Below, one piece after another: positions 52,340-64,000 of a DNA stretch of 64,000 nt. Each line of letters starts with the position of its first letter. Positions within the stretch are counted from its first letter, which is position 1. A model generated the notes under the pieces. It was not told the origin of the DNA. It searched no databases and worked only from the letters and a program-made list of their open reading frames with translations. The stretch spans positions 62,496,001-62,560,000 of the forward strand of contig NC_135761.1 in assembly GCF_052425735.1 (NCBI RefSeq), given 5' to 3'. Source of the stretch: Oculina patagonica. Its lineage: Eukaryota. A program made the position numbers and the translations under genes.

Positions 52340-53883
52340 CTACTTTAATTCGACTACATAGTCTTGAAGATGCTGCGGGAGACGCCGCCGCCGGGTAGGG
52401 CGCTTGTTCACCGCAGGGCTAACAATTGGAGAGAGGGCAGGGATAACCTCGACGTCATCTGGCGAGCCGGGTTGGCTATCCTCATCATAACTCGGGACAT
52501 CTTCTGGTGGTACAGAAGCGGAAGGTGGAGACGATATCTCGATAGGGATCCCTGGGGCAGGCGGAGGTAACGGTTGACTTTCTGGGGGAGGTTCCTCGTC
52601 AATAGGAAGTCCACGACCATCAGCGGGTAAGCCCTGGTCGACACCAACAACGTCAGGATCGCAGTCGCTGGAGTCTTCGTCGTTGAGGTACCTGGGCGTG
52701 TGTACACTGAAGGGGGCGACCTTATAGCACTCATTCTTCTTCACGCGGTACGAAACGTTTCGTAGCTGTGAGCCAACGAACTTGCGAACATTACACCACT
52801 CACGGTCAACTGAGACAACGAGGTAACGGTCACGACTTTGGGACTTGTTACGGTCACAGTAGAGGTAAACTAAGTCACCAACAGATATTGAAGGAGAGCT
52901 ACGCGAGACACCACGGGGGGCTTTCGACGTTTCACTGTGAGGATGGTTTTCCAGTCTTTGCAGATGTTGCTCGCGTATTAGCGCCTGATCTGTTAGGGGA
53001 ATCTGAGAGTTGGTAAACTGGTCTCGTTGAGTCCACATTTCTCTAGCAGATAGGCCGCGGGAGCGGATTCTTGAGTTCAGGTTGGCAGTGGCTACGGACA
53101 GAGTCCTAGGAGAGACAGGACCACCTTCCGGTTGCAACCGCAGGAGCTCGTGTTCCAACTCTTGGATTGCTTTTTCAGCGACTGGATTCTTGTTCTGATT
53201 TTTCACCCGACCAATCTCAAGGCTAATCTTGTGTTGCAATAGAAGCTGGTCACTCACAAGGGCTCTGAAGGCGGGAGCTGGATCACACCGAATGACAGCG
53301 TTAGGTCCATCAAGGGGTCGCAAGCCGACGCATAATTGGATTAACCCATCACGTAAGGTCCCATGCTTCTCGTCTACCACGAGGAGGGTTGAAGTATAGG
53401 AAGTGACGCACTCTCGGAGTACCAAAATAAGTTGGCGAGACTGCTTCAGGATATCGGCTGCGAAAGATACACCCACTGCTGCCGGAGGGTCAGAAGTTGA
53501 CTGTTCTATAACAGCGTGCGGGGCGTGGCGAAGTGCAGCGCATGAATGACAACCAAGGGAAACACGCTCTATTGCCTTGTCCAGGTCAAGGGCGAAGAAG
53601 TAGCGGCTGACAACCTTCTTGAGTTGGAGACTTGATGGGTGAGACAACCTGAGGTGCAAGGCTGTCAGTAAACCATCTAAGACCTGTCTGGGCACTATGA
53701 TACAATCCCGCGAAGGAGCCAAAGGCTCAGTCTTTTTCACGACTAAGAGGCCATCACTGGAGATAGAAGCTACTGACAAGTACCTTTTTACGTCCTTAAT
53801 GTTAGTCAGCTTCTTGGAAGGACGAGTCCCTTGTATTAGGTGAGCATGTGTTCGACGTAAGTCCGCGCACTCAGATTGGATAG
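52340..53883 (-). CDS. Ty3/Gypsy-like pol, integrase portion (disrupted element)
   Basis: HHCC zinc finger (HLRLSH...CHSC), DDE core (FAADI, IRCDP, NPVAEKAI), SH3-like VGDLVY region and a typical C-terminal RPTRRRRLPQHLQDY. The ORF-track start at 53932 lies inside the inserted LTR. Confidence 0.85.
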
Positions 53884-54921
53884 TGTCACGGTATAAACTC
53901 GGCCCTTGTGATTCGAATATTAGAAAACACATCGAAACTCGGAAAATGGTAATTGTAAAATATATTTAACCTTACGATGTCATCTGTTGATTTAGCTTTG
54001 ACCATAAGCAAGATTCATTACAACTTATTTACCTTCCTTATGTGAATTTCCGATCTATTAGTGATCTTATCGTAAATCAGTTTCGCTCATCCGCAATCTA
54101 CTAGGAATTGCAAACTAAGCAAAAACCTTAGCAATAAGCTCTGTTGTTTGCACAACAGAGCACTCGAATATAAATCAAGCACGTACTATAAGGAAAGTCT
54201 TGCAGAGGTCATTGTAAATAGAGAATCATCAATATAATTATACAACTTAAGATAAAAATGAACTTCTTATTGATCTTTAATGCAGTTTCTCGTTGTATTT
54301 CGCTTTATGTCAGTAATCTAATTATATTCAGACTTCTGTAAAATGCAAGGTTAGCATATTACAAGTAACACTATTATTTGCCTTTATCTTAAGCAATATC
54401 CTGAAACTTATTTTGAACGGAAGATTTAAGTGTTAAGCAATTTCCTTCCTAGAGATCGACATTGATAAACTCAATGTAGTTTTTTATTTAGCCTTGAACT
54501 TGTATTTTCACCTGTCATTATTATCACACTTTAAACATATATAAGAAGCCCTTTTCTGTACGACATTTGAATTACCTTGGAATTACCTTTGAATTACCTT
54601 CGAATTACCTCAAGCTACCACCGAGCTACCATTGAGTTACCTACAGCTGTCAAGAGTTGTTTAGTCCAGATGCAATAAAGAAGATAGAAGAAGTTCCTAA
54701 ACCTTGAGTGTCTTACTGCCGCTGAAATGCTGTCCGACTGATCTAGAAGCTAACGACCCTGTACCTCTGGCATTGAGTAACGAGTGCCGTGCAGCGAGCC
54801 TGTGCTCTACCTAGCTTTCTCCCCCGTTCAAGCCGTCCAAACCGTCCGTTAAACAGCGCCCCAGCTGGTTATCCGTTCCCGTGCATTTAGTGCACTTTAG
54901 AGCCAAAAACCTATCGTTACA
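53884..54921 (+). mobile_element. Solo LTR (~1.04 kb) inserted into the Gypsy pol
   Basis: Termini TGTCACG...CGTTACA, flanking duplication (A)TAG, TATATAA ~54538, AATAAA ~54674. Removing it rejoins pol as ...NTWLSIQSEC... Confidence 0.8.
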
Positions 54922-56000
54922 TAGACAGCCAAGTATTTCGACTTGTGAAAGGAAGGTTTTTCTGACCAGATAAGACATCCTGGGCAGATAGGTGTCGAAC
55001 GACAGACTCCTCAGCTTGGGTGATGAACTTGCACACCTGACAAGAGGGATCAGAGCAGTCCGGTGCATTGCGGCTTGCAAAGTCAGAAGGTAAAATTGCA
55101 GCACCAGCAACATGCCTCACGTTGGCTTGGAAGCGGCTGACAGTAGACAAATAGGTCGACACTCGTGGGCTAGCAGAAAACTCTCCCCTGCACATTTTCT
55201 CGAAGGCCTGGACACAAGGCTTACTGTCGGTGAGCACACAAGCCTTGTGCTTGGATTGTATTATGTACGGACTGAAGTGTTTTATAGCAACCCCAATTGC
55301 AAGAGCTTCAACTTCACACGGTAGCCAAGACACTTGATGAGCACGCAATTTGGCACTAAAGAACCCAGCGAGGGCTAGGTTGTCACCCCTCGAGATGTAG
55401 AGAGTGGCAGCGATTCCGGGTCTCTTGACAGCAGCGTCTGTCACAATCCATAATTGGTCATCGGGCTTTGGAAGAGTGATTGTGCGGCTGGACGCAAGGG
55501 AAGCTTGGGCAGACTTGAAGGCCTCAGTAAGATGTACGGACCACACGATGTCATCCTGAGACTGTTTCCCAGCTACGGCCTCGTCAAGGGGGGCTAATAG
55601 AGAAGAACAATGTGGAACAACACGAGCAAGGACCTTGAAAGCACCAATGAAGGACTTCATGCCACTAACTTTACTGGGAGCTAGGACTGCAGGAGGACAG
55701 GGTTGAGACGCGATGAGGGTTGGCGCGAAGAGTGCCTTGGGACCAAGTCCAACCCAGGATAGAAGTAGTTTTTGGATTGATGATGGTCTTCGACGCCGAG
55801 AGGCGTAGGCTAGCTTTATGAAGAGCTTGGAGAACAGAAGCCCAATTTCGGAGTAACTCGTCTGGGCTGTTGCCCCCACAGTACAGATCATCTGCTATCT
55901 TGGCAACGATACAAGCCTGGAGGAGGTCACCCAAGACGCGACACATGAGCTCTTCCAGTGCGGTTTCTGAGCCAGGTATACCCATGGCCGACCGGGCATG
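54922..56000 (-). pseudogene. Ty3/Gypsy-like pol, 5'-truncated RT / RNase H portion with a frameshift
   Basis: AMGIPGSETALEELM, KIADDLYCGG, ILGW primer grip, LWIVTDAA, WLPCEVEAL, LTDSKP, SDFASR. Frameshift near 55680, consistent with a 4-nt AGCT insertion. Confidence 0.85.
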
Positions 56001-56134
56001 GGATCTCGGTATACCTAGGCGTTTAGTGTTTCCACACACATTGTTAACTAAAAACACTGGTATAGCTTGATTGTCGAGTTATCAAACAATAGTCCAAATA
56101 GAGTGGCCGTTGTCGTCGCCGTGTCGTCTTTTTT

Positions 56135-56734
56135 TCAGTCCTCTTCTTCTTGGTCTTCGTCATACTCCAATTTTCGTCTCAACTTTTTGCCTTTGGCCCA
56201 ATCTTCCCAACCGGGTAATGGTTTCAGTTTCTCGGCTTCCGTTTTTCGCACAGCTGGCTTTTTCCTCGTCTTTAGTTTCTCTTCTAAACTCTTGAATCTC
56301 TCTGCCAATGTCGGTTTGCCCGCAGGTGCCGTTTTTGCTTTCTTTGTCGCCTTCGGAGTGACTGTGGGAGGTGATTTCTTGGCACTCCCTTTTATGAGTT
56401 GTTTCAACATGGTCTCCACGGGTCCCGTCACCAAACCTACATTCTCCAACTCCTCCTCCTCCTCCTCCGCTTCTTCGCCCGGCCGTCTGGCTGTTACTCC
56501 TCCCATGGGAAATTGACGTATCCGTTTGGTCAAACGAGCCCGTTCGCGAGCGAGAGGTTTCACTCGTGCCACGGCGATACCATCGGGAACGGATTTATCT
56601 TTTAACAGCAAGTGACTTTCGGCTGCTATGCGAGCCGCTTTGTTCAACAATGCATTGTCCGTGATTTCGCCTTTGTAATATTGCACCAAACGATTCAAGT
56701 CTTTAGCGGGAACCATCACGACTTCCTCGGTCAT
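56135..56734 (-). CDS. Viral hypothetical protein, 199 aa, Lys-rich with acidic tracts
   Basis: Intact ATG ORF overlapping the upstream gene; last gene of the viral run. Confidence 0.7.
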   Translation of the reverse strand: MTEEVVMVPAKDLNRLVQYYKGEITDNALLNKAARIAAESHLLLKDKSVPDGIAVARVKPLARERARLTKRIRQFPMGGVTARRPGEEAEEEEEELENVGLVTGPVETMLKQLIKGSAKKSPPTVTPKATKKAKTAPAGKPTLAERFKSLEEKLKTRKKPAVRKTEAEKLKPLPGWEDWAKGKKLRRKLEYDEDQEEED

Positions 56735-57065
56735 CTTTGAAGTATTCTTCCAACAAGCTTTCGTAACACCCTTGCCAGTAACGAACTTCCTCTTCTAACT
56801 TGGCTATGCGCCTTTTCAAGTCGCTTCTCGATGTACACTTGTCGCTACACTCCTTGCACAGTACTAGGGTCTTTCCTTCCGGAGTCTCTTGCCTCTCACG
56901 AATGCAATCTTCGCACTCTGCGTCGTATTTTAAAGCCAAATAGTCATGATTGACGCGGGCGTAGGCTTCGTGCCAATGGTCTGCTCTTTTTTCCCACTCT
57001 GCTTCTCTGTCCGCCGATTCGTGTAACATTTTCATCATTGTCTGGAGGGTGTTTTGCAGAGACAT
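56703..57065 (-). CDS. Viral hypothetical coiled-coil protein with CxxC...CxxC
   Basis: CEDC and CKEC between heptad-like segments. Start at 57065 or 57038 (ATGA overlap with the upstream stop). Confidence 0.65.
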   Translation of the reverse strand: MSLQNTLQTMMKMLHESADREAEWEKRADHWHEAYARVNHDYLALKYDAECEDCIRERQETPEGKTLVLCKECSDKCTSRSDLKRRIAKLEEEVRYWQGCYESLLEEYFKDDRGSRDGSR

Positions 57066-57370
57066 GCTTGGTAGATCTGTTGCAGTCCTTTCCAAAACCC
57101 GCTACCCTTCTGTGACAGGAGACCTTCTCGCCTTCTCTTCAACGAGTTTCTGCGCTTACCCAGTTCGCGCAAGACTTTCTTATATCGTCGCAGCTTGGCG
57201 GTGATCGGTGGACTGAGCGGAATGCGGTTCTTGAGCAAATTCAATACCATCTCACTCACGGCGTTGATCTGATCGGCGTTGGCGTGCTGTAACATCTCTT
57301 CTCGCTTGAACCGATTGGCTTCTCTCAGAATGCTCCCCAAGAACGGACGCTGTCGACGTAATCGATTCAT
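57035..57370 (-). CDS. Basic viral protein of a type commonly seen in Polintons (putative core protein)
   Basis: LQHANADQINAVSEMVLNLLKNRIPL...LLSQKGSGFW; ATG overlaps the upstream TGA. Confidence 0.7.
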   Translation of the reverse strand: MNRLRRQRPFLGSILREANRFKREEMLQHANADQINAVSEMVLNLLKNRIPLSPPITAKLRRYKKVLRELGKRRNSLKRRREGLLSQKGSGFWKGLQQIYQACLCKTPSRQ

Positions 57371-57570
57371 ACTTCCCACGGGGCTGGACGTCGGTTGTAA
57401 CTACCGGTGACGCCCTTTGCCCCCATTCTCTTATAGCGTTTGTCCTTTCCCAATTTATAACCCAACTTGCCGGCAAACTTGAGTATGTCCAATAAACCCT
57501 CTCCTCTCCACACGGGGCCTCTTTTAGGTTGTTTTCGTCTTCTCCTTACTATCTTTCTTCCTCGCACCAT
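57367..57570 (-). CDS. Small Arg/Lys-rich putative core protein
   Basis: Basic N-terminus, WRGEG motif, amphipathic LLDILKFAGKLGYKLG. Confidence 0.65.
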   Translation of the reverse strand: MVRGRKIVRRRRKQPKRGPVWRGEGLLDILKFAGKLGYKLGKDKRYKRMGAKGVTGSYNRRPAPWEV

Positions 57571-57638
57571 CTTGTCGCAGAATGCAGTCTGTTGTAACTA
57601 CCGGTGACGCCCAATGCCCCCATCCTCTTATAGTGTTT

Positions 57639-57845
57639 TTATCTCTTTTTCTTTCGAGTGGCTGCATCCAAGGCTTTCTTTGCACCCCAACCTGCAGCAC
57701 CCGATGCAGCACCCAAAGCGATTGCTTTTCCACCCGCGATCAAAGCTGGTATCAAGGCTGCTAAGGGTAAAATACCACCCTTCTGTCCTATTCTTCTCCT
57801 GCCAGCACGTCTCCGCCTTTGCGTCACACGTTTCTTTCTCCTCAT
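57639..57845 (-). CDS. Adenovirus pX/Mu-like core protein precursor
   Basis: RRRRAGRRRIGQKGG-ILPLAALIPALIAGG resembles adenoviral pX (Arg-rich, then xxGG-ILPLLIPLIAAAIG, recalled from memory). Confidence 0.72.
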   Translation of the reverse strand: MRRKKRVTQRRRRAGRRRIGQKGGILPLAALIPALIAGGKAIALGAASGAAGWGAKKALDAATRKKKR

Positions 57846-57849
57846 GGTC

Positions 57850-58071
57850 CTATCGTCGTCGCGGTCTACGTCTATAATGATTTACATTATCCATTATCCC
57901 TTTAAATCCTTGACTGGCCAATTTACCACCCAACGTGAAGAATGTGGGTGAAGGACCCGAGAGAAACATGCTGGCCCCCTCGGCTATCTTGTCCACCAAA
58001 CGATGTTTACGTCTCGCGAGAGCTCCACCTCGCTGCCTCCTTCTTCTGGCCTTACGTTTCGTTCTTCCCAT
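57850..58071 (-). CDS. Small Arg-rich putative core protein
   Basis: MGRTKRKARRRRQRGG-AL...; basic at both ends; packed between its neighbours. Confidence 0.65.
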   Translation of the reverse strand: MGRTKRKARRRRQRGGALARRKHRLVDKIAEGASMFLSGPSPTFFTLGGKLASQGFKGIMDNVNHYRRRPRRR

Positions 58072-58089
58072 CCTACCATAACTGTCACT

Positions 58090-58584
58090 TCAGACGGGGG
58101 TACCTTCGGATTTATCGTGTTGTCGTTCGTACGCTTGCACGTACTTGTCGGCCACGGGCGGCGTGAAATCGGTGATCGTGTCATCTAGAGTTTGCATCTT
58201 GATCAAGAATCCTTCTAGTTCGTCCATCGGAAGACCGCGCGCGTACGTTCTCAATTCGATCAACGTCTTGTCGTAGCTGGTGTAGGCAAAACGACATACG
58301 TCCACTTTGAACGAATATTTCTTGAAATCGTTCCAGCCCTTGACCACAGTCCCAGCTGAAGTTAGGCATGCCACAATAACACTATTTTCTGTAAGGGAAC
58401 CCGCAATGATACCCGCTGCCACGATGAATAAAGCCAAAGCATTCAATGAAGCATGACACCACTTAAAATGGTAAAACATTTGACGATGACACCACCACTT
58501 TTTGTGGTAAAAGGTATACAATCCGTCCAATCTGTGTAACAGGTCTGGATCCAAGTTCGTCTTTGACCCGTTTAGTAGGGACAT
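58090..58584 (-). CDS. Viral two-TM-helix membrane protein, 164 aa
   Basis: Hydrophobic hairpin LNALALFIVAAGIIAGSL / VIVACLTSAGTVV flanked by helical segments. Confidence 0.7.
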   Translation of the reverse strand: MSLLNGSKTNLDPDLLHRLDGLYTFYHKKWWCHRQMFYHFKWCHASLNALALFIVAAGIIAGSLTENSVIVACLTSAGTVVKGWNDFKKYSFKVDVCRFAYTSYDKTLIELRTYARGLPMDELEGFLIKMQTLDDTITDFTPPVADKYVQAYERQHDKSEGTPV

Positions 58585-58586
58585 CT

Positions 58587-58988
58587 TTAATGGCTCACTC
58601 TCGTCGAGGTACGACGAACGGTCGGTCGTCCCCCGTCTTTATAGGTCGTAGTGATGGTGTTTGTCGTGGTGATGCCTGCGATGCGACGTCCAGCCGCCAC
58701 TTGACGTTGATCGTTGAACAGCATTTGCAATTGACGTTGCATGTCGTCTTGATTCAATCGGTGTGGACCACCCGTTAGCGTTCCTTGACCTGCAGGTACG
58801 TTGGACCTCGAGGAAGAAGGTCTCAAAGTCCCCGTACCCACTGCAGGAGACGGTAATTGATCCAAGTACCGTCTTAGGACTATGGGGTCGACTCGATCCA
58901 ATGTCTGTTCCAATCCCCCTCGGTTGACGTTGACGATCGGAATGGCACTAGGACTGGTTCCTACTCCTGCTGGCGAATGTCTTGACAT
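58587..58988 (-). CDS. Viral hypothetical protein, 133 aa
   Basis: Intact ATG ORF tiling exactly between its neighbours; Thr-rich C-terminus. Confidence 0.6.
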   Translation of the reverse strand: MSRHSPAGVGTSPSAIPIVNVNRGGLEQTLDRVDPIVLRRYLDQLPSPAVGTGTLRPSSSRSNVPAGQGTLTGGPHRLNQDDMQRQLQMLFNDQRQVAAGRRIAGITTTNTITTTYKDGGRPTVRRTSTRVSH

Positions 58989-59200
58989 GTTTTTCTAGCT
59001 CTCTCTTCTAGTGTCTGGATCAATTCGCTGAAGTAAGTCTCGTTATATTCTCTCACGAATTTCCACATCTGTCGCTTTTCGGCCAAATGTAGCACGGTTT
59101 GCATGGCCTCGTAGTCCATGTCCTCTTCTCTCATACGCTCGAAATGACGACTGCACAAGTCCAAGAACGCGAGCCACACGTGATCGTTACGTACGAACAT
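58961..59200 (-). CDS. Viral hypothetical protein, 79 aa
   Basis: ATG ORF overlapping the ATPase stop and the next start. Confidence 0.6.
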   Translation of the reverse strand: MFVRNDHVWLAFLDLCSRHFERMREEDMDYEAMQTVLHLAEKRQMWKFVREYNETYFSELIQTLEERARKTCQDIRQQE

Positions 59201-59852
59201 CTGGAACGAATCTGTAACATCTCATGCATCCCTCGTCTTTTAAGAGGTGGCTAAAAATCCGTCTGTCGTCGCCACTGGCAGGGTGTAGATCCAATACCAT
59301 GTAACCAAAGGGTCTTTCCGTCGTCTTGGTGTAGACGTCCATCACATCTTGCCATCGGGAGGGAAACGCTTGTAACAGTAAATTCCTCATGCCCAATTGA
59401 TCGCGAGGGTTCTTGAAAGCCACGATGTAATGCGCATTTCGAGAAATGCTCTTGGCGTATTTTCCCGGCGGAAACATGTCTTGACACAAGTACAGGACGG
59501 TGATGTTCCTGTGGTGGGAAAGTTTGGTGAACAGATCCAATACTCTCTTGTCGTTTCCTCCTTCTTCCATCAGATCGTCCAATACCATCACCCCTCCACG
59601 GGGAAACCATTTGGTCAAATCTACTTCTTCGGGAATCCCTTCGTGAAATTTCACGCCTCGCTTTTTCATGTTCGCGAAACCGTCTTGCCAAGCCCCAAAA
59701 CAGTAATGAATGGTCTCAGGGGGTGTACTAAACAACTCTTTTGAGTGATTCAAAAGTACCGACTCGGTAAAACAAGTCTTTCCGCAGCTAGAGGGGCCCA
59801 CGATCAAAATGCTAGAGGGCATCCGAAAGCTAAAGGCTTCACCGCGCTCCAT
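59187..59852 (-). CDS. FtsK/HerA-superfamily (A32-like) DNA packaging ATPase
   Basis: Walker A GPSSCGKT, Walker B MVLDD, SHHRNITVLYLCQ, ISRNAHYIVAFKNPRD. Probable ATG at 59852. Confidence 0.92.
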   Translation of the reverse strand: MERGEAFSFRMPSSILIVGPSSCGKTCFTESVLLNHSKELFSTPPETIHYCFGAWQDGFANMKKRGVKFHEGIPEEVDLTKWFPRGGVMVLDDLMEEGGNDKRVLDLFTKLSHHRNITVLYLCQDMFPPGKYAKSISRNAHYIVAFKNPRDQLGMRNLLLQAFPSRWQDVMDVYTKTTERPFGYMVLDLHPASGDDRRIFSHLLKDEGCMRCYRFVPDVRT

Positions 59853-59859
59853 GGCGAAA

Positions 59860-59975
59860 TGACATTCGTCAAAAAACGAGCAATGATATAAGCATGTTGC
59901 AGAAAAAAAGTCTGCAACGAATCCCGATCTCCCGAGCGACAGACGACACACACCTTATTTATTTCAACGTTTTTA
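59860..59975 (-). promoter_or_regulatory. Viral intergenic region: poly(A) signal for the upstream block and TATA-like element for the ATPase block
   Basis: AATAAA overlaps the protease stop with a second AATAAA downstream; CTTATAT lies ~35-40 bp upstream of the ATPase ATG. Confidence 0.45.
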
Positions 59976-60554
59976 TTTGTCATCTCCCAACAACAAGTGT
60001 CTTACACCGCAGAGAGACGGTTCACAATCCTGATGGTATTCCATCTTACAAATTTTGTGCCACGACCTTTCCTTCGAGATCAATTGCTTCAACATTTGCC
60101 CAACTTTATGATCATTGTACACGTAATCGTGTTTCTTGAATCTCGCTTCGAATTGACTCATGCTACGTCCTTCGGCCCTATCGATGAGATACATCAACGC
60201 GTAATCGCCGCAGCTCTGACTGAACAACGATTGTAGACTCTGTCCGTTGCGCTCCACGTACTTCCAATGAGCGTCCAACCAATCTTGCAACGGTTGCGCC
60301 GTCTGGTACACCTCCAGGGGTAAGGCGTAACTGTCCAACACTTCGCACACGTTTCCATTCGTCCACAACGCGATCCAATGCCGACCGCGCATGTAGTGAG
60401 GATCGGTGTTGACGATGTACCCGCGGGCTTCCGTCTTGAATGGTTTGCGAGGTAATCGATCGCAGGCCACTGTCCCGTAAAAATAAGGTTTCAACGACGG
60501 GTGATGTCTGGCCAACTGATCCAATTGCACGTTATTCAAAGTCACTTTCTCCAT
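59973..60554 (-). CDS. Adenain/Ulp1-like (clan CE) cysteine maturation protease
   Basis: IVNTDP...GRHW (His), LDSY (Asp), LQSLFSQSCGDY (oxyanion Gln, catalytic Cys). Confidence 0.92.
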   Translation of the reverse strand: MEKVTLNNVQLDQLARHHPSLKPYFYGTVACDRLPRKPFKTEARGYIVNTDPHYMRGRHWIALWTNGNVCEVLDSYALPLEVYQTAQPLQDWLDAHWKYVERNGQSLQSLFSQSCGDYALMYLIDRAEGRSMSQFEARFKKHDYVYNDHKVGQMLKQLISKERSWHKICKMEYHQDCEPSLCGVRHLLLGDDK

Positions 60555-60556
60555 CA

Positions 60557-61960
60557 CTAACGCTGGTACACGTCGTACAACACGGCTTTGTTCTTGTCTA
60601 TCTCCAAGAGATTCTCAAACTCTCCGTACACGATGATGGTCAAGTTCACAGCTGGGTTGGCTCCAAAGTTCAGCTCTATTAGTAGATTTCCGGCTTGCTT
60701 GGGGTTCATCCTGTAACTGTCCACGCATCCATTGGCCACGTTGTCGAACACGAACAACGTGCAATTCTTTCCTTGTCCCCAATCGTCACCTCTCACCATG
60801 TTTCCTTGCTGCTTGCACAGGCATCCGGTGGCTTGCAAGAAACGGTGGTACCCTCTGAGATCTTTGGTGGCATCGTTGTGAACCAGTTCTAGCGTCTCGT
60901 AAGGATACTCTTCTCCTCCCACGAGTTGTTTTATGCTGCTCATTCCAAACTTCTGAAAACAGAAGGGATCGTTGACCACGTTCCCGGTGAAGGCTGTGGA
61001 CAGTACCATACCCACGATCACGCGGTTGGGAATTCTTCCTTGGAACAAGTTGGTGCATTCGTACCGTCGTTGATCTCCCTGCATGTTGAAGGTCCGAATC
61101 TCGCTTCTCACGGTCGGGTAACTCACCACTTGACTCTTGGTGGTCATCTCATCCATCAGTCTCCTGTACGTCGTGGGATTGAGACGCACTTGACACAGGT
61201 ACATTCGAACTTTGACTTCCTCGGCCGTCAACTTTCCTGCCAGACCCACTCCGTTCAAGAACACGTCGGGAGAATTGAAGTACATCTGTATTCCTATCTG
61301 CACTCTGGGTACCAACAACTTGCTCAGATGAAACACTTCGATGAGGGGTTTGAAACGCAACACGTGTCGCTTGCCTTCCGTGTAATTGGCTTGTTCTGCT
61401 TTAGAGTTCTTGAGAGCCTCCTTGTGATTGGCGGTCAGGGCTACATAGTCTGCGTGTCCAGCTCCAGCGTTGGCTGCAGTGTTCGTGTTATTGTCCGTCC
61501 ACGTGGCTGGGAAATCGATATGATTGTACCATCCTTGAGGTTTCAAGATGGTTTCTCCATCACGTCTGTCGTAATTCAGCAACGTTTCCAAGAAGGCTCT
61601 GTAATGGTACGTGTCCGTCTGGGGACTGATGAGAGTACCGTTGAGACGCACGCTGATTTGCTTGAACAGAGAATGGGCTAGATTGTTGACGGGCCACAGC
61701 TTGTCGGCAGCTGCCACGTTCTCATCGTTGTCTTTCTTCAGTTGCAATTCTACCTCGAAAAAGCTACGGCTGAGATCGATGTAATCTTCTTGGGGGTCGA
61801 TCTGAAACTCCACCGGATTGATGCCTGTGGTGTAGGTCTGAACGGGGACCATCCGATACGACGAGACGCTGACGTCTGTCGGTGGTACGGCGAATAGATC
61901 CAATCGAGGATTGGCCTCGCGTCTCGACTGCGGGTAGGCGCTCGAGATGGTTTCGGTCAT
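60557..61960 (-). CDS. Major capsid protein (double jelly-roll, hexon-like), ~467 aa
   Basis: LDLFAVPPTD, YIDLSRS, PVNNLAHSLFKQISVRLNG, YRAFLETLLNY, FQGRIPNRVIVGMV, AFTG...PFCFQ are typical Polinton MCP motifs. Probable ATG at 61960 overlaps the upstream stop. Confidence 0.9.
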   Translation of the reverse strand: MTETISSAYPQSRREANPRLDLFAVPPTDVSVSSYRMVPVQTYTTGINPVEFQIDPQEDYIDLSRSFFEVELQLKKDNDENVAAADKLWPVNNLAHSLFKQISVRLNGTLISPQTDTYHYRAFLETLLNYDRRDGETILKPQGWYNHIDFPATWTDNNTNTAANAGAGHADYVALTANHKEALKNSKAEQANYTEGKRHVLRFKPLIEVFHLSKLLVPRVQIGIQMYFNSPDVFLNGVGLAGKLTAEEVKVRMYLCQVRLNPTTYRRLMDEMTTKSQVVSYPTVRSEIRTFNMQGDQRRYECTNLFQGRIPNRVIVGMVLSTAFTGNVVNDPFCFQKFGMSSIKQLVGGEEYPYETLELVHNDATKDLRGYHRFLQATGCLCKQQGNMVRGDDWGQGKNCTLFVFDNVANGCVDSYRMNPKQAGNLLIELNFGANPAVNLTIIVYGEFENLLEIDKNKAVLYDVYQR

Positions 61961-62193
61961 CGTCTTCTCTTCCTTCTTGCACTGCGCTTCCGTAAGGTCT
62001 GTATCCAGTCGTAGCCAGGAGGCTTTCTGACCTCGGGACCTATCCACCCGCCCTTTTGTACTTTTCGTCGTCGGCTCTTTTGTCCCAACAAGGCCTGGTT
62101 CAAAAGTGCCAGTGAGAATCCTTCTCCCCGCTGTCTGACGGGGGCGCGTTTGGATCGGACCAATCTAGACGATCGCGAGTAAACGGGATTCAT
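61957..62193 (-). CDS. Small basic putative core protein
   Basis: Arg-rich with QRGEG and QKGG motifs; ATGA overlaps at both ends. Confidence 0.65.
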   Translation of the reverse strand: MNPVYSRSSRLVRSKRAPVRQRGEGFSLALLNQALLGQKSRRRKVQKGGWIGPEVRKPPGYDWIQTLRKRSARRKRRR

Positions 62194-62447
62194 TTTTCGG
62201 CAAAGATGTCGTTCAGTTTTCTCTTGACGTTTCGTTCTATGACGTTTTTCAGTTTGCGTTTCACGACTCGTTTAGGACCACTCTTGGCTCCTTGACCCGC
62301 TTTACGAATGCGGTCCGCGACGCCGCGCCCACTCTTAAATCCTCTCACGGCTCCACCGAGAGACTCTCTCACGATGTCGGCCAAAAATCCGTTCCCCTCT
62401 TGAGGTGGAGGATCCGGTGTGAAACGCGTCAGGGCACCGCCTCTCAT
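62190..62447 (-). CDS. Small basic putative core protein between mCP and MCP
   Basis: MRGG and QEGNG motifs, Lys/Arg-rich, ends ...NDIF; ATGA overlaps at both ends. Confidence 0.7.
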   Translation of the reverse strand: MRGGALTRFTPDPPPQEGNGFLADIVRESLGGAVRGFKSGRGVADRIRKAGQGAKSGPKRVVKRKLKNVIERNVKRKLNDIFAEK

Positions 62448-63475
62448 GTTCGCTTGATATGTAAGGTCACGATCGTGTTGCCTTCGCCAAAATCCACCAG
62501 TTTACCTGTAGTCTCGCTCACTTGCGTTTCAATAATGTCCACGATCTGGTTGCGGAGTGGAATATATTGTATGTGGAGAGGTTCAAAGTACTTGATACCT
62601 TTTCCTTCACGTTGAAAGTGAATTTCCCGCAACAGATCCGTGACTTGATTTCCCACAACGGAACTACCACCCACGTCTGAGTAAACGAAAAGCGTACGCG
62701 ATGCATCTCCAATCACTTTTTGGAAGGCTCTGTTGAGTTTCACAAAGCGCCAGTTGCAATAGCAACTCAAGAAAAGCTGTCCATTCTCAACAACCCAGAA
62801 ATTTTTCTTGCCCTCTCCAAAATCATCCACGTCTATGGGATCGGGTATCGTAGCCTGGTGGCATTCCGGCTTCAGGTTCGGCCCGAGAAACACGTTTTCT
62901 TTCTCGTCCTTTTTTACCCATCCCATGTCAAAGGCCAAATCCTCGTTGAAAGACATGTAATATGGGACGCCTTCAGTTTTCACTTCCGAGACGTCCAAGT
63001 TCGAGTTGTCGAGGACTAGTTCTTCACCTTCCCACTTGAAAGTATATTCCCACTGCTTTCCATTATCGGGCGACTTGGTCAAGTCTCCCACGATACGCTT
63101 GTATTCTTTGACTTGATCGAACTTGAAGACCAGGGCTTTCATGAAACTGAGGCCATCCACGATGTTGTCGTCATATAGAATGTCCTGGAACGTCAGATCG
63201 GTGGTCACCGACTTGCTTTGCACGCGACCCTCGTTGTCTTTGCGCTTGAGCATCCACTGGGCACTCAAGAGAGGAAACTTGAACGACTTAAAGCGAGTTA
63301 AGTCGATGCTGGCATCTGGCACGGAAATGCTACTCAATCCCACTTTCCAACCGGTTCCTTCCAATCGTAGCGGGTGAGGTAATCGCACCTTGAAAGAGTT
63401 TGCTCTATTCTCTGGAAACTCGGTTCCGCTGCTGTGACTGGGTAACGTGACGTAAAATCCTTCCTCGTGGCTCAT
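62444..63475 (-). CDS. Minor capsid protein (single jelly-roll, penton-like)
   Basis: FYVTLPS.S...FPEN.ANSFKVRLP.PL.L...WKVGL..I N-terminus and LFVYSD...VGN....LLR...Y.PL...G..V.F..G...VTLH C-terminus. Confidence 0.88.
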   Translation of the reverse strand: MSHEEGFYVTLPSHSSGTEFPENRANSFKVRLPHPLRLEGTGWKVGLSSISVPDASIDLTRFKSFKFPLLSAQWMLKRKDNEGRVQSKSVTTDLTFQDILYDDNIVDGLSFMKALVFKFDQVKEYKRIVGDLTKSPDNGKQWEYTFKWEGEELVLDNSNLDVSEVKTEGVPYYMSFNEDLAFDMGWVKKDEKENVFLGPNLKPECHQATIPDPIDVDDFGEGKKNFWVVENGQLFLSCYCNWRFVKLNRAFQKVIGDASRTLFVYSDVGGSSVVGNQVTDLLREIHFQREGKGIKYFEPLHIQYIPLRNQIVDIIETQVSETTGKLVDFGEGNTIVTLHIKRT

Positions 63476-64000
63476 GATTTTTTTAGAGCCGTCTTCTCGA
63501 TCCAGCTGTCGTACTTGTCTGGCCAGCCTTTCCAGTGCACCAAGACTTTATTTCCTTTTCGTTTGACGATCTTGTCCACCCTGAAGACATCGTCGTCGGA
63601 CACTGCGACTTTTTGTAGATCTTCCTTGTAAAACGTACCGCGAAGGGGGGTGTCGTCCAACTCTTGGATCTTGTAAGTCGTGACGGGTGGTCCCCGACGC
63701 ACCTCTCGTATCACAAACACTTCTTCGGTCCAGCCGGGTAAATACCCTTTCTCGAACGTGCGAAATTTCTTGTTCAATCTCACGCGTTCTCCTACTTTTA
63801 GCGGGGTTTTTCGTTCTCTTTTACCCGACGACAATCTCTTCGCGTACAGACGTTCCCACACTTTTCCTTCGTTGCTCGCATTCACTGTCTCGGGGCTGGT
63901 GCCGATGCTACGATGGTGGGATCCGTTGTAACCTCTCACCAAGGCCTGGAGTACAGGTAGGTAACTGAGCGTGTTCTTGGCGGTAAAGTATCGGTACATG
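63472..64000 (-). CDS. Retroviral-like (c-)integrase, C-terminal part with chromodomain (5' end outside the window)
   Basis: YNGSHHRSIGTSP, KVGERVR, FEKGYLPGWTEEVF, GTFYKEDLQ, then chromodomain VDKIV...VLVHWKGWPDKYDSWI. Confidence 0.92.
   Translation of the reverse strand, partial: MYRYFTAKNTLSYLPVLQALVRGYNGSHHRSIGTSPETVNASNEGKVWERLYAKRLSSGKRERKTPLKVGERVRLNKKFRTFEKGYLPGWTEEVFVIREVRRGPPVTTYKIQELDDTPLRGTFYKEDLQKVAVSDDDVFRVDKIVKRKGNKVLVHWKGWPDKYDSWIEKTALKKS

What the first reader, a model, noticed from the sequence alone, without database searches (positions are those of the whole stretch)
57035..62447. Six small basic proteins share an adenovirus-style protease cleavage code, mostly with Gln at P4
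Seen: MRGG-A and QEGNG (62190-62447), QRGEG and QKGG-W (61957-62193), QRGG-A (57850-58071), QKGG-I (57639-57845), WRGEG (57367-57570) and QKGSG (57035-57370). Most follow an Arg/Lys tract and precede a hydrophobic or amphipathic segment. Known: adenain cuts (M/I/L)xGG|x and (M/I/L)xGx|G in core precursors pVII, pX and pVI. Inference: an expanded protamine-like DNA-condensing core system matured by the element's own protease (59973-60554) with shifted P4 specificity, releasing basic DNA-binding peptides and membrane-active helices. These tiny genes would normally be missed by annotation.
Basis: partly seen in the sequence, partly recalled or inferred. Interest (0 to 1): 0.82.

Follow-up and report, generated by a model that had tools for sequence, protein, structure and literature searches.

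The report
Protease-cut core proteins of coral Maverick
A virus-like Maverick/Polinton element in a coral genome carries six tiny, very basic genes that share a conserved Gln-x-Gly-Gly or Gln-x-Gly-x-Gly signature. This is most likely the cutting site of the element's own adenovirus-type protease, so it is a sequence-level variant of a known virus maturation system, not a new kind of system.

Summary
All eight quoted motifs are present at the stated coordinates. Q-x-G-(G-x|x-G) occurs 6 times in 482 residues against 0.34 expected (0 of 20000 shuffles).

The region is the virion module of a Maverick/Polinton ('adintovirus'-like) element in the coral Oculina patagonica:
- a double jelly-roll capsid protein;
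- a protease whose fold is closest to adenain, with the His, Gln and Cys columns invariant;
- a packaging ATPase and an integrase.

The small ORFs are real genes, with dN/dS 0.12-0.22 against 0.15 for the capsid protein. Their motifs sit at orthologous positions in relatives down to 27-32% capsid identity. Seven of the eight sites keep P4 (Gln at six, the initiator Met at one), and Gly at P2 is invariant. The GG|x and Gx|G forms swap within one column. In 121 homologues of the 111-aa protein, P4 is Gln in 115, while P3 and P1 vary.

The best reading is a set of protease-processed core and membrane-active precursors, comparable to adenovirus pX, pVII and pVI, adomavirus LO6 and adintovirus PLA2X. 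Cleavage itself is inferred.

'Shifted specificity' is overstated: a published extended adenain consensus already lists Gln at P4. I rate this a new variant of a known kind, of moderate interest.

The parts
56108..64000 (-). Retained part of a Maverick/Polinton (adintovirus-like) element. It runs off the window at 64000. The low-coordinate end abuts a retroelement fragment.
   Evidence: Nucleotide similarity to relatives L001-L005 spans about 56145-64000. The 99.3%-identical Logan contigs are colinear with the window down to 56108 and then diverge from it. Relatives carry rve integrase, PLA2 (PF08398) and PolB (PF03175).
63472..63999 (-). C-terminal part of the integrase, with a chromodomain; the gene continues beyond the window.
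   Evidence: Chromo PF00385, E=6.9e-6. tblastn with the integrases of L001 and L004 gives 85% and 68% identity.
62444..63475 (-). 343-aa minor capsid (penton) candidate.
   Evidence: It sits between the integrase and the capsid protein, as in published Maverick maps (PMC8097293). Homologues are present in every related locus. Its fold was not tested.
62190..62447 (-). s85, an 85-aa basic protein. It has M-R-G-G|A at residues 1-5 and Q-E-G-N|G at 16-20. The predicted 66-aa C-terminal piece has net charge +13 and is amphipathic.
   Evidence: Across 10 orthologues, Met1 is 10/10, Gln16 is 10/10 and Gly at P2 is 10/10; the GG-x and G-x-G forms split 4:6 at the second site. dN/dS is 0.18.
61957..62193 (-). 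s78, a 78-aa basic protein. It has Q-R-G-E|G at 21-25 and Q-K-G-G|W at 46-50, giving three predicted basic pieces. With s85 it occupies the 'PW' slot between the minor and major capsid genes.
   Evidence: Gln at P4 is 5/5 at both sites. dN/dS is 0.16. The slot is described in PMC8097293.
60557..61960 (-). 467-aa major capsid protein with a double jelly-roll fold.
   Evidence: AF2 pLDDT 90.7. Foldseek matches the capsid proteins of an iridovirus, PBCV-1, Sputnik and mavirus at E about 1e-15 to 1e-13. The search finds 5517 representative relatives.
59973..60554 (-). 193-aa clan CE, adenain-like cysteine protease; the presumed processing enzyme.
   Evidence: The profile hits ASFV S273R (E=3e-4) and adenain 1avp (E=8e-4). 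AF2 pLDDT is 92.1. The top six Foldseek hits are adenovirus proteases (E 5e-8 to 6e-7, TM 0.54-0.65). H59, Q108 and C115 are invariant; E71 and D74 are nearly so.
59187..59852 (-). 221-aa packaging ATPase candidate (FtsK/HerA, A32-like).
   Evidence: Weak hits to AAA_16 and Pox_A32. It is conserved at 64-73% identity in relatives. The L009 homologue carries a faint Pox_A32 hit.
58587..59200 (-). Two ORFs of 79 aa and 133 aa with unknown function. Homologues of the second are longer and glycine-rich in several relatives.
58090..58584 (-). 164-aa SLATT-like two-transmembrane protein.
   Evidence: SLATT_1 PF18181, E=3e-4, below the family cut-off. A SLATT homologue is listed for viruses with adinto-like genes (figure legend in PMC8502044). 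62-80% identity in four relatives and 38% in L009.
57850..58071 (-). s73, a 73-aa basic protein with Q-R-G-G|A at residues 13-17. The predicted 16-aa N-terminal piece is 56% R+K, net +9.
   Evidence: The Q-R-G-G-A column is identical in all 4 rows that have letters there. In L002 and L005 it is fused to a second module through a second Q-R-G-G site.
57639..57845 (-). s68, a 68-aa protein. A 24-aa Arg-rich head (net +13) is followed by Q-K-G-G|I at 21-25 and then a hydrophobic Ala/Gly-rich helix (mean KD 1.9 over 18 residues). It is the pX/Mu-like candidate.
   Evidence: Gln, Gly and Gly are 7/7 in orthologues, and P1' is always hydrophobic. Adeno_PX PF05829 matches below threshold in 3 of 7 members, best E 0.0075. 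dN/dS is 0.12.
57367..57570 (-). s67, a 67-aa protein. A 24-aa basic head (net +10) is followed by W-R-G-E|G at 21-25 and then an amphipathic helix (hydrophobic moment 0.57).
   Evidence: P2 Gly is 5/5, but P4 varies (W2, Q1, S1, G1). In L002 the same C-terminal domain directly follows a Q-R-G-G-A site. dN/dS is 0.22.
57035..57370 (-). s111, a 111-aa basic helical protein with Q-K-G-S|G at 87-91. Cutting there would release a 21-aa C-terminal peptide that starts with Gly and contains Cys.
   Evidence: Among 121 family members, P4 is Gln in 115, P2 is Gly in 114 and P1' is Gly in 110, while P3 and P1 vary. P2' is Phe in 116 and P3' is Trp in 115. The tail has a median length of 16 aa and holds a Cys in 114 of 120. 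dN/dS is 0.14.
56135..57065 (-). Two conserved ORFs of 120 aa (coiled-coil-like) and 199 aa with unknown function. Neither has a Q-site.
56108..56163 (-). Remnant of the PLA2-like gene. It is broken once, cut short where the element ends against the retroelement.
   Evidence: Only the basic N-terminal tract is left, and tblastn with relatives' PLA2 proteins finds nothing in the window. A 99.3%-identical copy (L014) has a complete 121-aa PLA2 ORF with a Q-R-G-R-G site at residue 18.

Best explanation
The six small basic ORFs are precursor proteins of the virion interior of a Maverick/Polinton element. In intact relatives the PLA2-like protein belongs to the same set.

Each one carries one or two copies of a short linear site: P4 Gln (Met at one site), P3 any residue, P2 Gly, and then either Gly|x or x|Gly. 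I infer that the element's own adenain-like cysteine protease cuts there inside the assembled particle.

Cutting would free three kinds of piece:
1. Arg/Lys-rich peptides of 16-24 residues (net +9 to +13), which stay on the DNA as adenovirus Mu and VII do.
2. Hydrophobic or amphipathic helices, and in intact copies a PLA2 domain, for acting on membranes at entry.
3. From the 111-aa protein, a short Gly-started, Cys-containing C-terminal peptide.

Shown here: the genes are real and constrained; the site is conserved with exactly the variable and invariant positions of the two published adenain site types; the protease has an adenain-like fold and an intact catalytic set.

Inferred, not shown: that cutting happens, which enzyme does it, and what the pieces do.
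For: (1) Enrichment. In the window there are 6 sites against 0.34 expected, and 0 of 20000 shuffles reach 6. Over 11 loci there are 61 against 4.0, and 0 of 2000 shuffles reach 61, confined to the small basic ORFs.

(2) Positional conservation. All 54 aligned orthologous rows fit xxG(G.|.G). P4 is invariant at 7 of the 8 window sites: Gln at six and the initiator Met at one. Four sites switch between the GG-x and G-x-G forms within one column. That switch is the signature of the two adenain site types quoted in PMC6048507 and in bioRxiv 10.1101/341131.

(3) The 111-aa family. In 121 sequences, P4, P2 and P1' are 91-95% conserved while P3 and P1 vary freely.

(4) Persistence with divergence. 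The sites persist down to 27-32% capsid identity (L010, L011, L013).

(5) Module boundaries. Where two small genes are fused, a Q-R-G-G site sits at the junction (L002 13558-13899, L005 14557-14889).

(6) Coding constraint. dN/dS is 0.12-0.22 for the small ORFs, against 0.15 for the capsid protein.

(7) The protease.

(8) Precedent. The N-terminal tetrapeptide Met-Arg-Gly-Gly of the s85 family is the same tetrapeptide used as an adenain test substrate (PMC4246237). Adomavirus LO6, which carries such motifs, is found in lower-molecular-weight bands of virions, which its authors take to suggest a cleaved form. The mavirus protease cuts at GG|X and GX|G.
Against: - There is no direct evidence of cleavage, of particles, or of expression.
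- The small proteins have no significant sequence match to adenovirus pX, pVI or pVII. Pfam Adeno_PX stays below its cut-off, and profile searches of solved structures find nothing.
- The WRGEG site has a poorly conserved P4.
- A cut after only four N-terminal residues (MRGG|) has no precedent in the papers I read.
- The window's copy is itself truncated: the PLA2 gene is cut short and no PolB lies in the window. This particular copy is therefore a relic, whatever its lineage does.
- I could not examine the S4 pocket of the model.
Confidence: 0.72

Rival explanations
1. The sites are cut, but by a different Gly-Gly-specific protease. Candidates are the vOTU-like cysteine protease domain of the element's protein-primed PolB, or a host clan CE/CA enzyme of the SUMO, NEDD8 or ubiquitin systems.
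For: The pPolB of polintons contains a vOTU-like deubiquitinylase domain that is predicted to be an active protease (PMC11161782). Relatives' PolB N-termini carry a Q-site of their own. The fold search also places host SENP, NEDP1 and bacterial clan CE enzymes among the protease's neighbours, so Gly-Gly specificity is common in this clan.
Against: The adenain-like protease is encoded inside the virion module next to the capsid gene. Its homologues in adenovirus and mavirus are packaged and cut exactly such sites in virion proteins. Enzymes of the ubiquitin-like systems normally need the folded modifier, not a short linear site (my own knowledge).
Confidence: 0.1
2. The motif is conserved for a reason other than proteolysis. 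Possibilities are a flexible hinge between a nucleic-acid-binding tract and a helix, an RGG-type nucleic-acid-binding or arginine-methylation box, or part of a nuclear or nucleolar targeting signal.
For: Several sites read R-G-G and follow Arg-rich tracts. Gly-Gly is a natural helix breaker.
Against: P3 is not constrained to Arg: Lys, Thr, Asn, Asp, Glu, Trp and Tyr all occur there. The invariant Gln two residues before the first Gly, and the GG-x to G-x-G swap, have no explanation under a hinge or RGG model. They match the published protease site types exactly.
Confidence: 0.1
3. The small ORFs are not genes, and the motifs are chance or a by-product of base composition.
For: There is no expression evidence, no Pfam family, and the public annotation of this genome does not call them.
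Against: The ORFs are open and syntenic in 10 or more divergent loci. dN/dS is 0.12-0.22. There are 205 database homologues for the 111-aa protein alone. No shuffle reaches the observed counts.
Confidence: 0.02

Closest known systems
Adenovirus core and lytic precursors (pX/Mu, pVII, pVI) processed by adenain
   Same: - Small Arg-rich precursors.
- A papain-like clan CE protease encoded next to the capsid gene.
- Two site types with Gly at P2 and either GG|x or Gx|G (PMC6048507, PMC4246237).
- A basic peptide plus a hydrophobic segment, as in pX.
- A C-terminal peptide that starts with Gly and contains Cys, as in pVIc.
   Different: - There is no significant sequence homology of the small proteins; Adeno_PX matches only below threshold.
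- Gln is the rule at P4, where the consensus quoted from the literature lists it after Met, Ile, Leu and Asn.
- There are six to seven separate tiny genes, in two clusters flanking the capsid-protease-ATPase block.
- The host is a cnidarian, and the element integrates by means of an rve integrase.
Adintovirus virion accessory proteins (PLA2X, GasderminX, cupiennin-like; 'Macc' class) and adomavirus LO6
   Same: - The same gene neighbourhood: penton, small core genes, hexon, adenain.
- A PLA2 domain protein.
- pX-like basic and hydrophobic modules.
- LO6 carries adenain motifs and is reported in lower-molecular-weight bands of virions, which suggests a cleaved form (10.1101/341131; PMC8502044).
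   Different: - In the intact relatives the PLA2 protein is short (89-127 aa as called) and has the site at its N-terminus. The pX-like modules are separate genes instead of a C-terminal domain of the PLA2 protein.
- Neither paper mentions a Gln-at-P4 rule or the full substrate set, in the parts I read.
Mavirus/Sputnik virophage maturation (cysteine protease cutting the basic C-terminal domain of the capsid protein)
   Same: A clan CE protease, GG|X and GX|G sites, and basic DNA-contacting peptides detached from the capsid by cutting (PMC6048507).
   Different: In the virophages the basic peptides are a tail of the capsid protein. In this element the capsid protein has no basic tail and no Q-site, and the basic peptides are separate genes.
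Vertebrate Maverick small conserved ORFs PW, PM and PZ (Barreat & Katzourakis 2021)
   Same: Small conserved ORFs of unknown function in the same slots: between the minor and major capsid genes, and after the ATPase (PMC8097293).
   Different: Homology to PW, PM or PZ was not tested, because no sequences were on hand. The module order also differs: all genes here are on one strand.

Membership tests
Maverick/Polinton (adintovirus-like) element | Double jelly-roll major capsid protein | tested here: met
   AF2 pLDDT 90.7. Foldseek matches the capsid proteins of PBCV-1, an iridovirus, Sputnik and mavirus at E 1e-15 to 1e-13.
Maverick/Polinton (adintovirus-like) element | Retrovirus-like (rve) integrase | tested here: met
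   The window holds the C-terminal part with a chromodomain, 85% identical to the rve-bearing integrase of L001. The catalytic core lies beyond the window.
Maverick/Polinton (adintovirus-like) element | [quoted passage not shown] | tested here: inconclusive
   Absent from the window. Present (PF03175) in relatives L001-L004, L006 and L007. In L001, the closest relative, it lies on the far side of the integrase, which here would be off the window.
Maverick/Polinton (adintovirus-like) element | Adenain-like maturation protease and FtsK/HerA-type packaging ATPase | tested here: met
   Protease. The ATPase has only weak hits (AAA_16, Pox_A32), but it is conserved and syntenic.
Clan CE adenain-type protease (Peptidase C5 and relatives) | Fold, plus a His / Glu-or-Asp / Cys catalytic set with the oxyanion Gln seven residues before the Cys | tested here: met
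   H59, Q108 and C115 are invariant; E71 and D74 are 90% or more conserved. The His and Cys align with those of 1avp and 6lj9. The top fold hits are adenovirus proteases. Pfam Peptidase_C5 alone stays below its cut-off (15.6 against 21.3 bits).
Adenain substrate sites (types 1 and 2) | P2 Gly, GG|x or Gx|G, and a restricted P4 (M/I/L/N/Q as quoted in PMC6048507) | tested here: met
   All 54 orthologous rows fit; P4 is Gln or Met in 50 of them. In the 121-sequence family, P4, P2 and P1' are conserved while P3 and P1 are free.
Adenain substrate sites (types 1 and 2) | The bond is actually cut by the protease | not testable with these tools
   No biochemical or proteomic data are available here.
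Adenovirus pX/Mu family (Pfam Adeno_PX) | Significant sequence match to the family model | tested here: not met
   The window's 68-aa protein has no hit. Three of 7 orthologues match below the cut-off (best 16.6 bits against 25; E 0.0075). The match covers the Arg tract, the site and the start of the helix. It therefore works like pX, but membership is not shown.
Adenovirus pVI / pVIc cofactor | A C-terminal peptide released at a Gx|G site, with conserved Gly1' and a conserved Cys, that binds and activates the protease | tested here: inconclusive
   A Gx|G-type site, Gly at P1' (110/121) and a Cys in the tail (114/120) are present. The tail is longer, with a median of 16 aa. There is no sequence match to solved structures. 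The protease has no conserved Cys in the stretch (roughly residues 75-110) where I would expect the counterpart of adenain Cys104 to fall, by my own reckoning from the alignment. Binding was not tested.
Parvovirus-type PLA2 (Pfam Phospholip_A2_4) | PLA2 domain | tested here: not met
   In the window only the basic N-terminal remnant is left. Relatives' proteins match PF08398 (E=7e-13 for L001).

The most novel reading that the evidence does not exclude
The conserved C-terminal peptide of the 111-aa protein is the functional counterpart of adenovirus pVIc. It is released at the Q-K-G-x|G site, starts with Gly, is followed by a conserved Phe-Trp pair and contains a near-universal Cys. If so, the 'peptide cofactor / DNA sled' activation of adenain predates adenoviruses and operates in Maverick-type elements of cnidarians. 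The Gln-at-P4 rule would then define the whole substrate set (core peptides, PLA2, polymerase N-terminus) of a large Maverick clade.
Probability: 0.2. Interest if true: 0.72.

Novelty: new variant of a known kind. Interest (0 to 1): 0.5.

Why it matters
Mavericks/Polintons are thought to be viruses, yet their particles have never been seen. A conserved, protease-type site repeated across a battery of tiny basic genes is sequence-level evidence of three things. These lineages have been selected for a working maturation pathway. Their virion interior is built like that of adenoviruses. Their substrate set can be read from sequence.

In practice, the Q-x-G-(G|xG) rule gives annotators a way to recognise 50-110-aa genes that eukaryotic gene predictors skip or splice out. 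In this coral's public annotation they are swallowed by chimeric penton-capsid and protease-ATPase models.

The rule also poses a clear structural question: what makes the S4 pocket prefer Gln? It points as well to a possible ancestor of the pVIc cofactor mechanism.

Tried and rejected
- Frameshift fusion. I asked whether the N-terminal MRGG is really the junction of a penton-s85 fusion made by a -1 ribosomal frameshift; Buck et al. 2024 note slippery sequences at penton 3' ends. Rejected as a general explanation. The s85 frame is open for only 2-54 codons upstream, and in five relatives the ATG does not overlap the penton stop.\n- Sequence homology of the small proteins. Pfam at E up to 10 gives nothing for five of the six; the 111-aa protein has one weak hit far below its cut-off. 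Profile searches of solved structures with the s68 and s111 families give only noise. A profile search of solved structures with the capsid protein also gives only noise; only the fold search identified it.\n- The rest of the element. I looked for PLA2 and PolB elsewhere in the window and found none.\n- Prior reports. I searched the paper library for a Polinton cleavage motif. No paper held 'polinton' together with 'cleavage motif'.\n- Expression. Logan contigs from 14 runs (SRR11296567-607) are 99.3% identical and colinear with the window, but I could not tell whether the runs are RNA or DNA. They are therefore not counted as expression evidence.\n- Structure jobs.

Full report
WHAT IS THERE

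The last 8 kb of the window (about 56108-64000, minus strand) is a run of 16 tightly packed ORFs. Five junctions are ATGA start/stop overlaps.

The 467-aa ORF at 61960-60557 is 99% identical to part of an Oculina patagonica gene model, so the window comes from this coral. It has more than 600 close relatives and 5517 representative relatives. Its predicted structure (pLDDT 90.7) matches the double jelly-roll capsid proteins of an iridovirus, PBCV-1, Sputnik and mavirus (E 1e-15 to 1e-13).

The 193-aa ORF at 60554-59973 is an adenain-like clan CE cysteine protease:
- A profile of 39 homologues hits ASFV S273R (E=3e-4) and adenain 1avp (E=8e-4), with the His and Cys motifs aligned.
- The model (pLDDT 92.1) has adenovirus proteases as its six best fold matches (E 5e-8 to 6e-7, TM 0.54-0.65).
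- H59, Q108 and C115 are invariant, and E71 and D74 nearly so.

Related loci fetched through the capsid protein (L001-L013) carry rve integrase, a parvovirus-type PLA2 (PF08398) and protein-primed PolB (PF03175). The element is therefore a Maverick/Polinton of the PLA2-bearing 'adintovirus' type described by Starrett et al. (PMC8502044).

STATE OF THIS COPY

Inside the retained part every ORF is open. One gene, the PLA2-like gene, is broken once. It is cut short where the element ends against a fragment of a retroelement, marked by RVT_1 at 55671-56057 and RNase H at 54917-55891.

No PolB lies in the window. The integrase runs off the window end. In the closest relative, L001, PolB lies beyond the integrase.

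A 99.3%-identical copy assembled from 14 sequencing runs (L014-L021) is colinear with the window down to 56108. It then continues into a complete 121-aa PLA2 ORF.

THE OBSERVATION

- Q-x-G-(G-x|x-G) occurs 6 times in the 482 residues of the six proteins. Composition-preserving shuffles of each protein give 0.34 on average, and none of 20000 reaches 6.
- The number of GG/GxG sites as such is ordinary (14 against 11.2). The anomaly is Gln at P4.
- Over the window and ten relatives, Gln occupies P4 at 61 of 149 such sites in small basic ORFs, against a background of 4.6%. The shuffle mean is 4.0, and 0 of 2000 shuffles reach 61. Met comes second (13 sites). The larger ORFs of the same modules show no Gln excess.

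ARE THE TINY ORFS GENES?

Yes.
- Each has syntenic homologues in several divergent loci.
- Against L001, dN/dS is 0.12-0.22 for the six, compared with 0.15 for the capsid protein and 0.09 for the protease.
- The 111-aa protein alone has 205 database homologues.
- The public annotation of this genome nevertheless misses them. One gene model joins most of the penton candidate to the capsid protein and skips the 85- and 78-aa ORFs. Another joins protease and ATPase pieces.

IS THE MOTIF CONSERVED WHERE IT SHOULD BE?

In alignments of each family, all 54 orthologous rows fit xxG(G.|.G). P4 is invariant at seven of the eight window sites (Gln at six, the initiator Met at one), and P2 Gly is invariant at all eight. 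Four sites change between the GG-x and G-x-G forms within the same column.

In 121 members of the 111-aa family:
- P4 is Gln in 115, P2 is Gly in 114 and P1' is Gly in 110.
- P3 varies (K 47, T 44, N 18) and so does P1 (S 61, N 20, A 12, G 11).

Fixed P4, P2 and one Gly, with free P3 and P1, is the pattern of the two adenain site types as quoted in the literature. Born et al. give (M/I/L/N/Q)XGG|X and (M/I/L/N/Q)XGX|G (PMC6048507). Welch et al. give (MIL)XGXG or L(LR)GG (10.1101/341131).

The sites persist in relatives with only 27-36% capsid identity (L009, L010, L011, L013).

Where two small genes are fused in a relative, a Q-R-G-G site sits at the junction (L002 13558-13899, L005 14557-14889). 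The C-terminal domain that follows W-R-G-E-G in the window follows Q-R-G-G-A in L002. The Trp site, the weakest of the eight, is thus functionally replaced by a canonical one.

The N-terminus of the first gene after the penton is Met-(Arg/Lys)-Gly-Gly in nine of ten loci (Ile at P3 in L010). Met-Arg-Gly-Gly is the tetrapeptide used in a classic adenain substrate (PMC4246237).

The same Q-site precedes the PLA2 domain in all six relatives that have one. It also occurs near the PolB N-terminus in three of three relatives.

WHAT CUTTING WOULD PRODUCE

- 73-, 68- and 67-aa proteins: N-terminal peptides of 16-24 residues with 45-56% Arg+Lys and net charge +9 to +13.
- 68-aa protein: an Ala/Gly-rich hydrophobic helix (mean hydropathy 1.9 over 18 residues).
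- 67- and 85-aa proteins: amphipathic helices (hydrophobic moment 0.57-0.65).
- 78-aa protein: three basic pieces.
- 111-aa protein: a 90-residue basic helical body and a 21-residue tail. The tail starts with the conserved Gly and contains a Cys, which is present in 114 of 120 tails.

MECHANISM PROPOSED

By analogy with adenovirus maturation (PMC4246237) and mavirus (PMC6048507), the precursors would be packaged with the DNA and the protease. The protease would then cut at the Q-sites. The basic peptides would remain on the genome, and the hydrophobic or amphipathic pieces and the PLA2 domain would become free for membrane attack at entry.

Shown: the genes, the constraint, the site pattern, and the protease fold and catalytic residues. 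Inferred: the cutting, the enzyme-substrate pairing, and the roles of the products.

RIVALS

- Another Gly-Gly protease does the cutting, either the vOTU domain of PolB (PMC11161782) or a host enzyme. This is possible but less likely, given the protease's place in the virion module and the precedents.
- The motif has a non-proteolytic role, as a hinge, an RGG box or a targeting signal. That does not explain the invariant Gln, the free P3 or the GG-x to G-x-G swap.
- The ORFs are non-coding or the motifs arise by chance. Searches exclude this.

COMPARISON WITH WHAT IS KNOWN

The system works like the adenovirus core precursors with adenain, like adomavirus LO6, and like the adintovirus PLA2X and 'Macc' proteins. 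It is also the split-gene counterpart of the basic capsid tail that the mavirus protease removes.

Membership of the small proteins in the adenovirus families is not shown:
- Pfam Adeno_PX matches three orthologues of the 68-aa protein only below its cut-off.
- Nothing matches pVI or pVII.

Gln at P4 lies inside the extended adenain consensus quoted by Born et al., so 'shifted specificity' should read 'Gln is the dominant rather than an occasional P4 residue'. In the paper library I searched, no paper holds 'polinton' together with 'cleavage motif'.

THE pVIc PARALLEL

According to PMC4246237, pVIc is released at a Gx|G-type site, and its strictly conserved residues are Gly1' and a Cys. The tail of the 111-aa protein shares these features.

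It also differs. The tail is longer. No conserved Cys of the protease lies in the stretch where I would expect the counterpart of adenain Cys104, by my own reckoning from the alignment; the conserved cysteines are C31, C70 and the catalytic C115. I rate this reading at about 0.2.

VERDICT

I class it as a new variant of a known kind, of moderate interest.

A SLIP TO REPORT

None of these letters went into a tool call, a note or this report, and no conclusion rests on them. All consensus patterns cited here are taken from the named papers. Consensus lines printed by the alignment tool were not used.

Noticed in passing
window 63475-61957 and 57370-57367: There are five ATGA start/stop overlaps in a row: integrase to penton candidate, to 85 aa, to 78 aa, to capsid protein, and also 67 aa to 111 aa. 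Such overlaps suggest coupled termination and re-initiation, or simply extreme compaction. They are not conserved in all relatives.
   Followed up: partly
window 59187-63475 (proteins P0001, P0372, P0271): Public Oculina patagonica gene models are chimeras. One joins residues 38-337 of the penton candidate to the whole capsid protein and skips the two small ORFs. Others join protease and ATPase pieces.
   Followed up: yes
window 54917-56057 and 52340-53932: A retroelement fragment (RVT_1, RT_RNaseH) abuts the truncated end of the element. Next to it is a 530-aa ORF with no Pfam match. GC content rises from about 0.36-0.41 to about 0.45-0.50 from 52 kb onward.
   Followed up: partly
L001 945-5093(-), L003 17840-21413, L004 19082-21410: The PolB N-terminal regions of three relatives each carry a Q-x-G-G or Q-x-G-x-G site, at residues 45, 62 and 17. 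This recalls the processing of the adenovirus terminal-protein precursor.
   Followed up: partly
L002 13558-13899; L005 14557-14889; L007 9552-9956; L003 9181-9369: The small basic modules are shuffled among relatives. Some are fused pairwise with a Q-site at the joint, some are absent, and some have moved from downstream of the ATPase to upstream of the capsid gene.
   Followed up: partly
L003 7358-9147; L004 7315-9466; L005 7001-9105: Three relatives have two penton-like ORFs in tandem, where the window has one.
   Followed up: no
window 58587-58988; L003 12671-13576; L005 12793-13677; L007 12652-13602: The 133-aa ORF matches only the C-terminal part of proteins of 249-316 aa in relatives. 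In L003 and L005 these contain long glycine runs. The gene is absent from L001 and L002.
   Followed up: no
window 58090-58584: A 164-aa two-transmembrane protein has a sub-threshold SLATT_1 match. It sits just before the second cluster of small basic genes and is conserved in relatives.
   Followed up: partly
L014-L021 (Logan SRR11296567-SRR11296607): Contigs of 1.9-3.8 kb were fetched from 8 of the 14 runs of one series that carry this protein. They are about 99.3% identical to window 58990-56108 and colinear with it, and they hold intact small ORFs. Four of the eight run on past 56108 into PLA2 sequence, and L014 holds a complete 121-aa PLA2 ORF. Whether the runs are RNA or DNA could not be determined.
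   Followed up: partly
L001, L002, L003, L006: Several relatives are themselves degraded.
- L001: the penton ORF is short and the ATPase is in two ORFs.
- L002: the protease and ATPase ORFs are short.
- L003: the protease is in two ORFs.
- L006: nothing recognisable remains downstream of the capsid gene.
   Followed up: no
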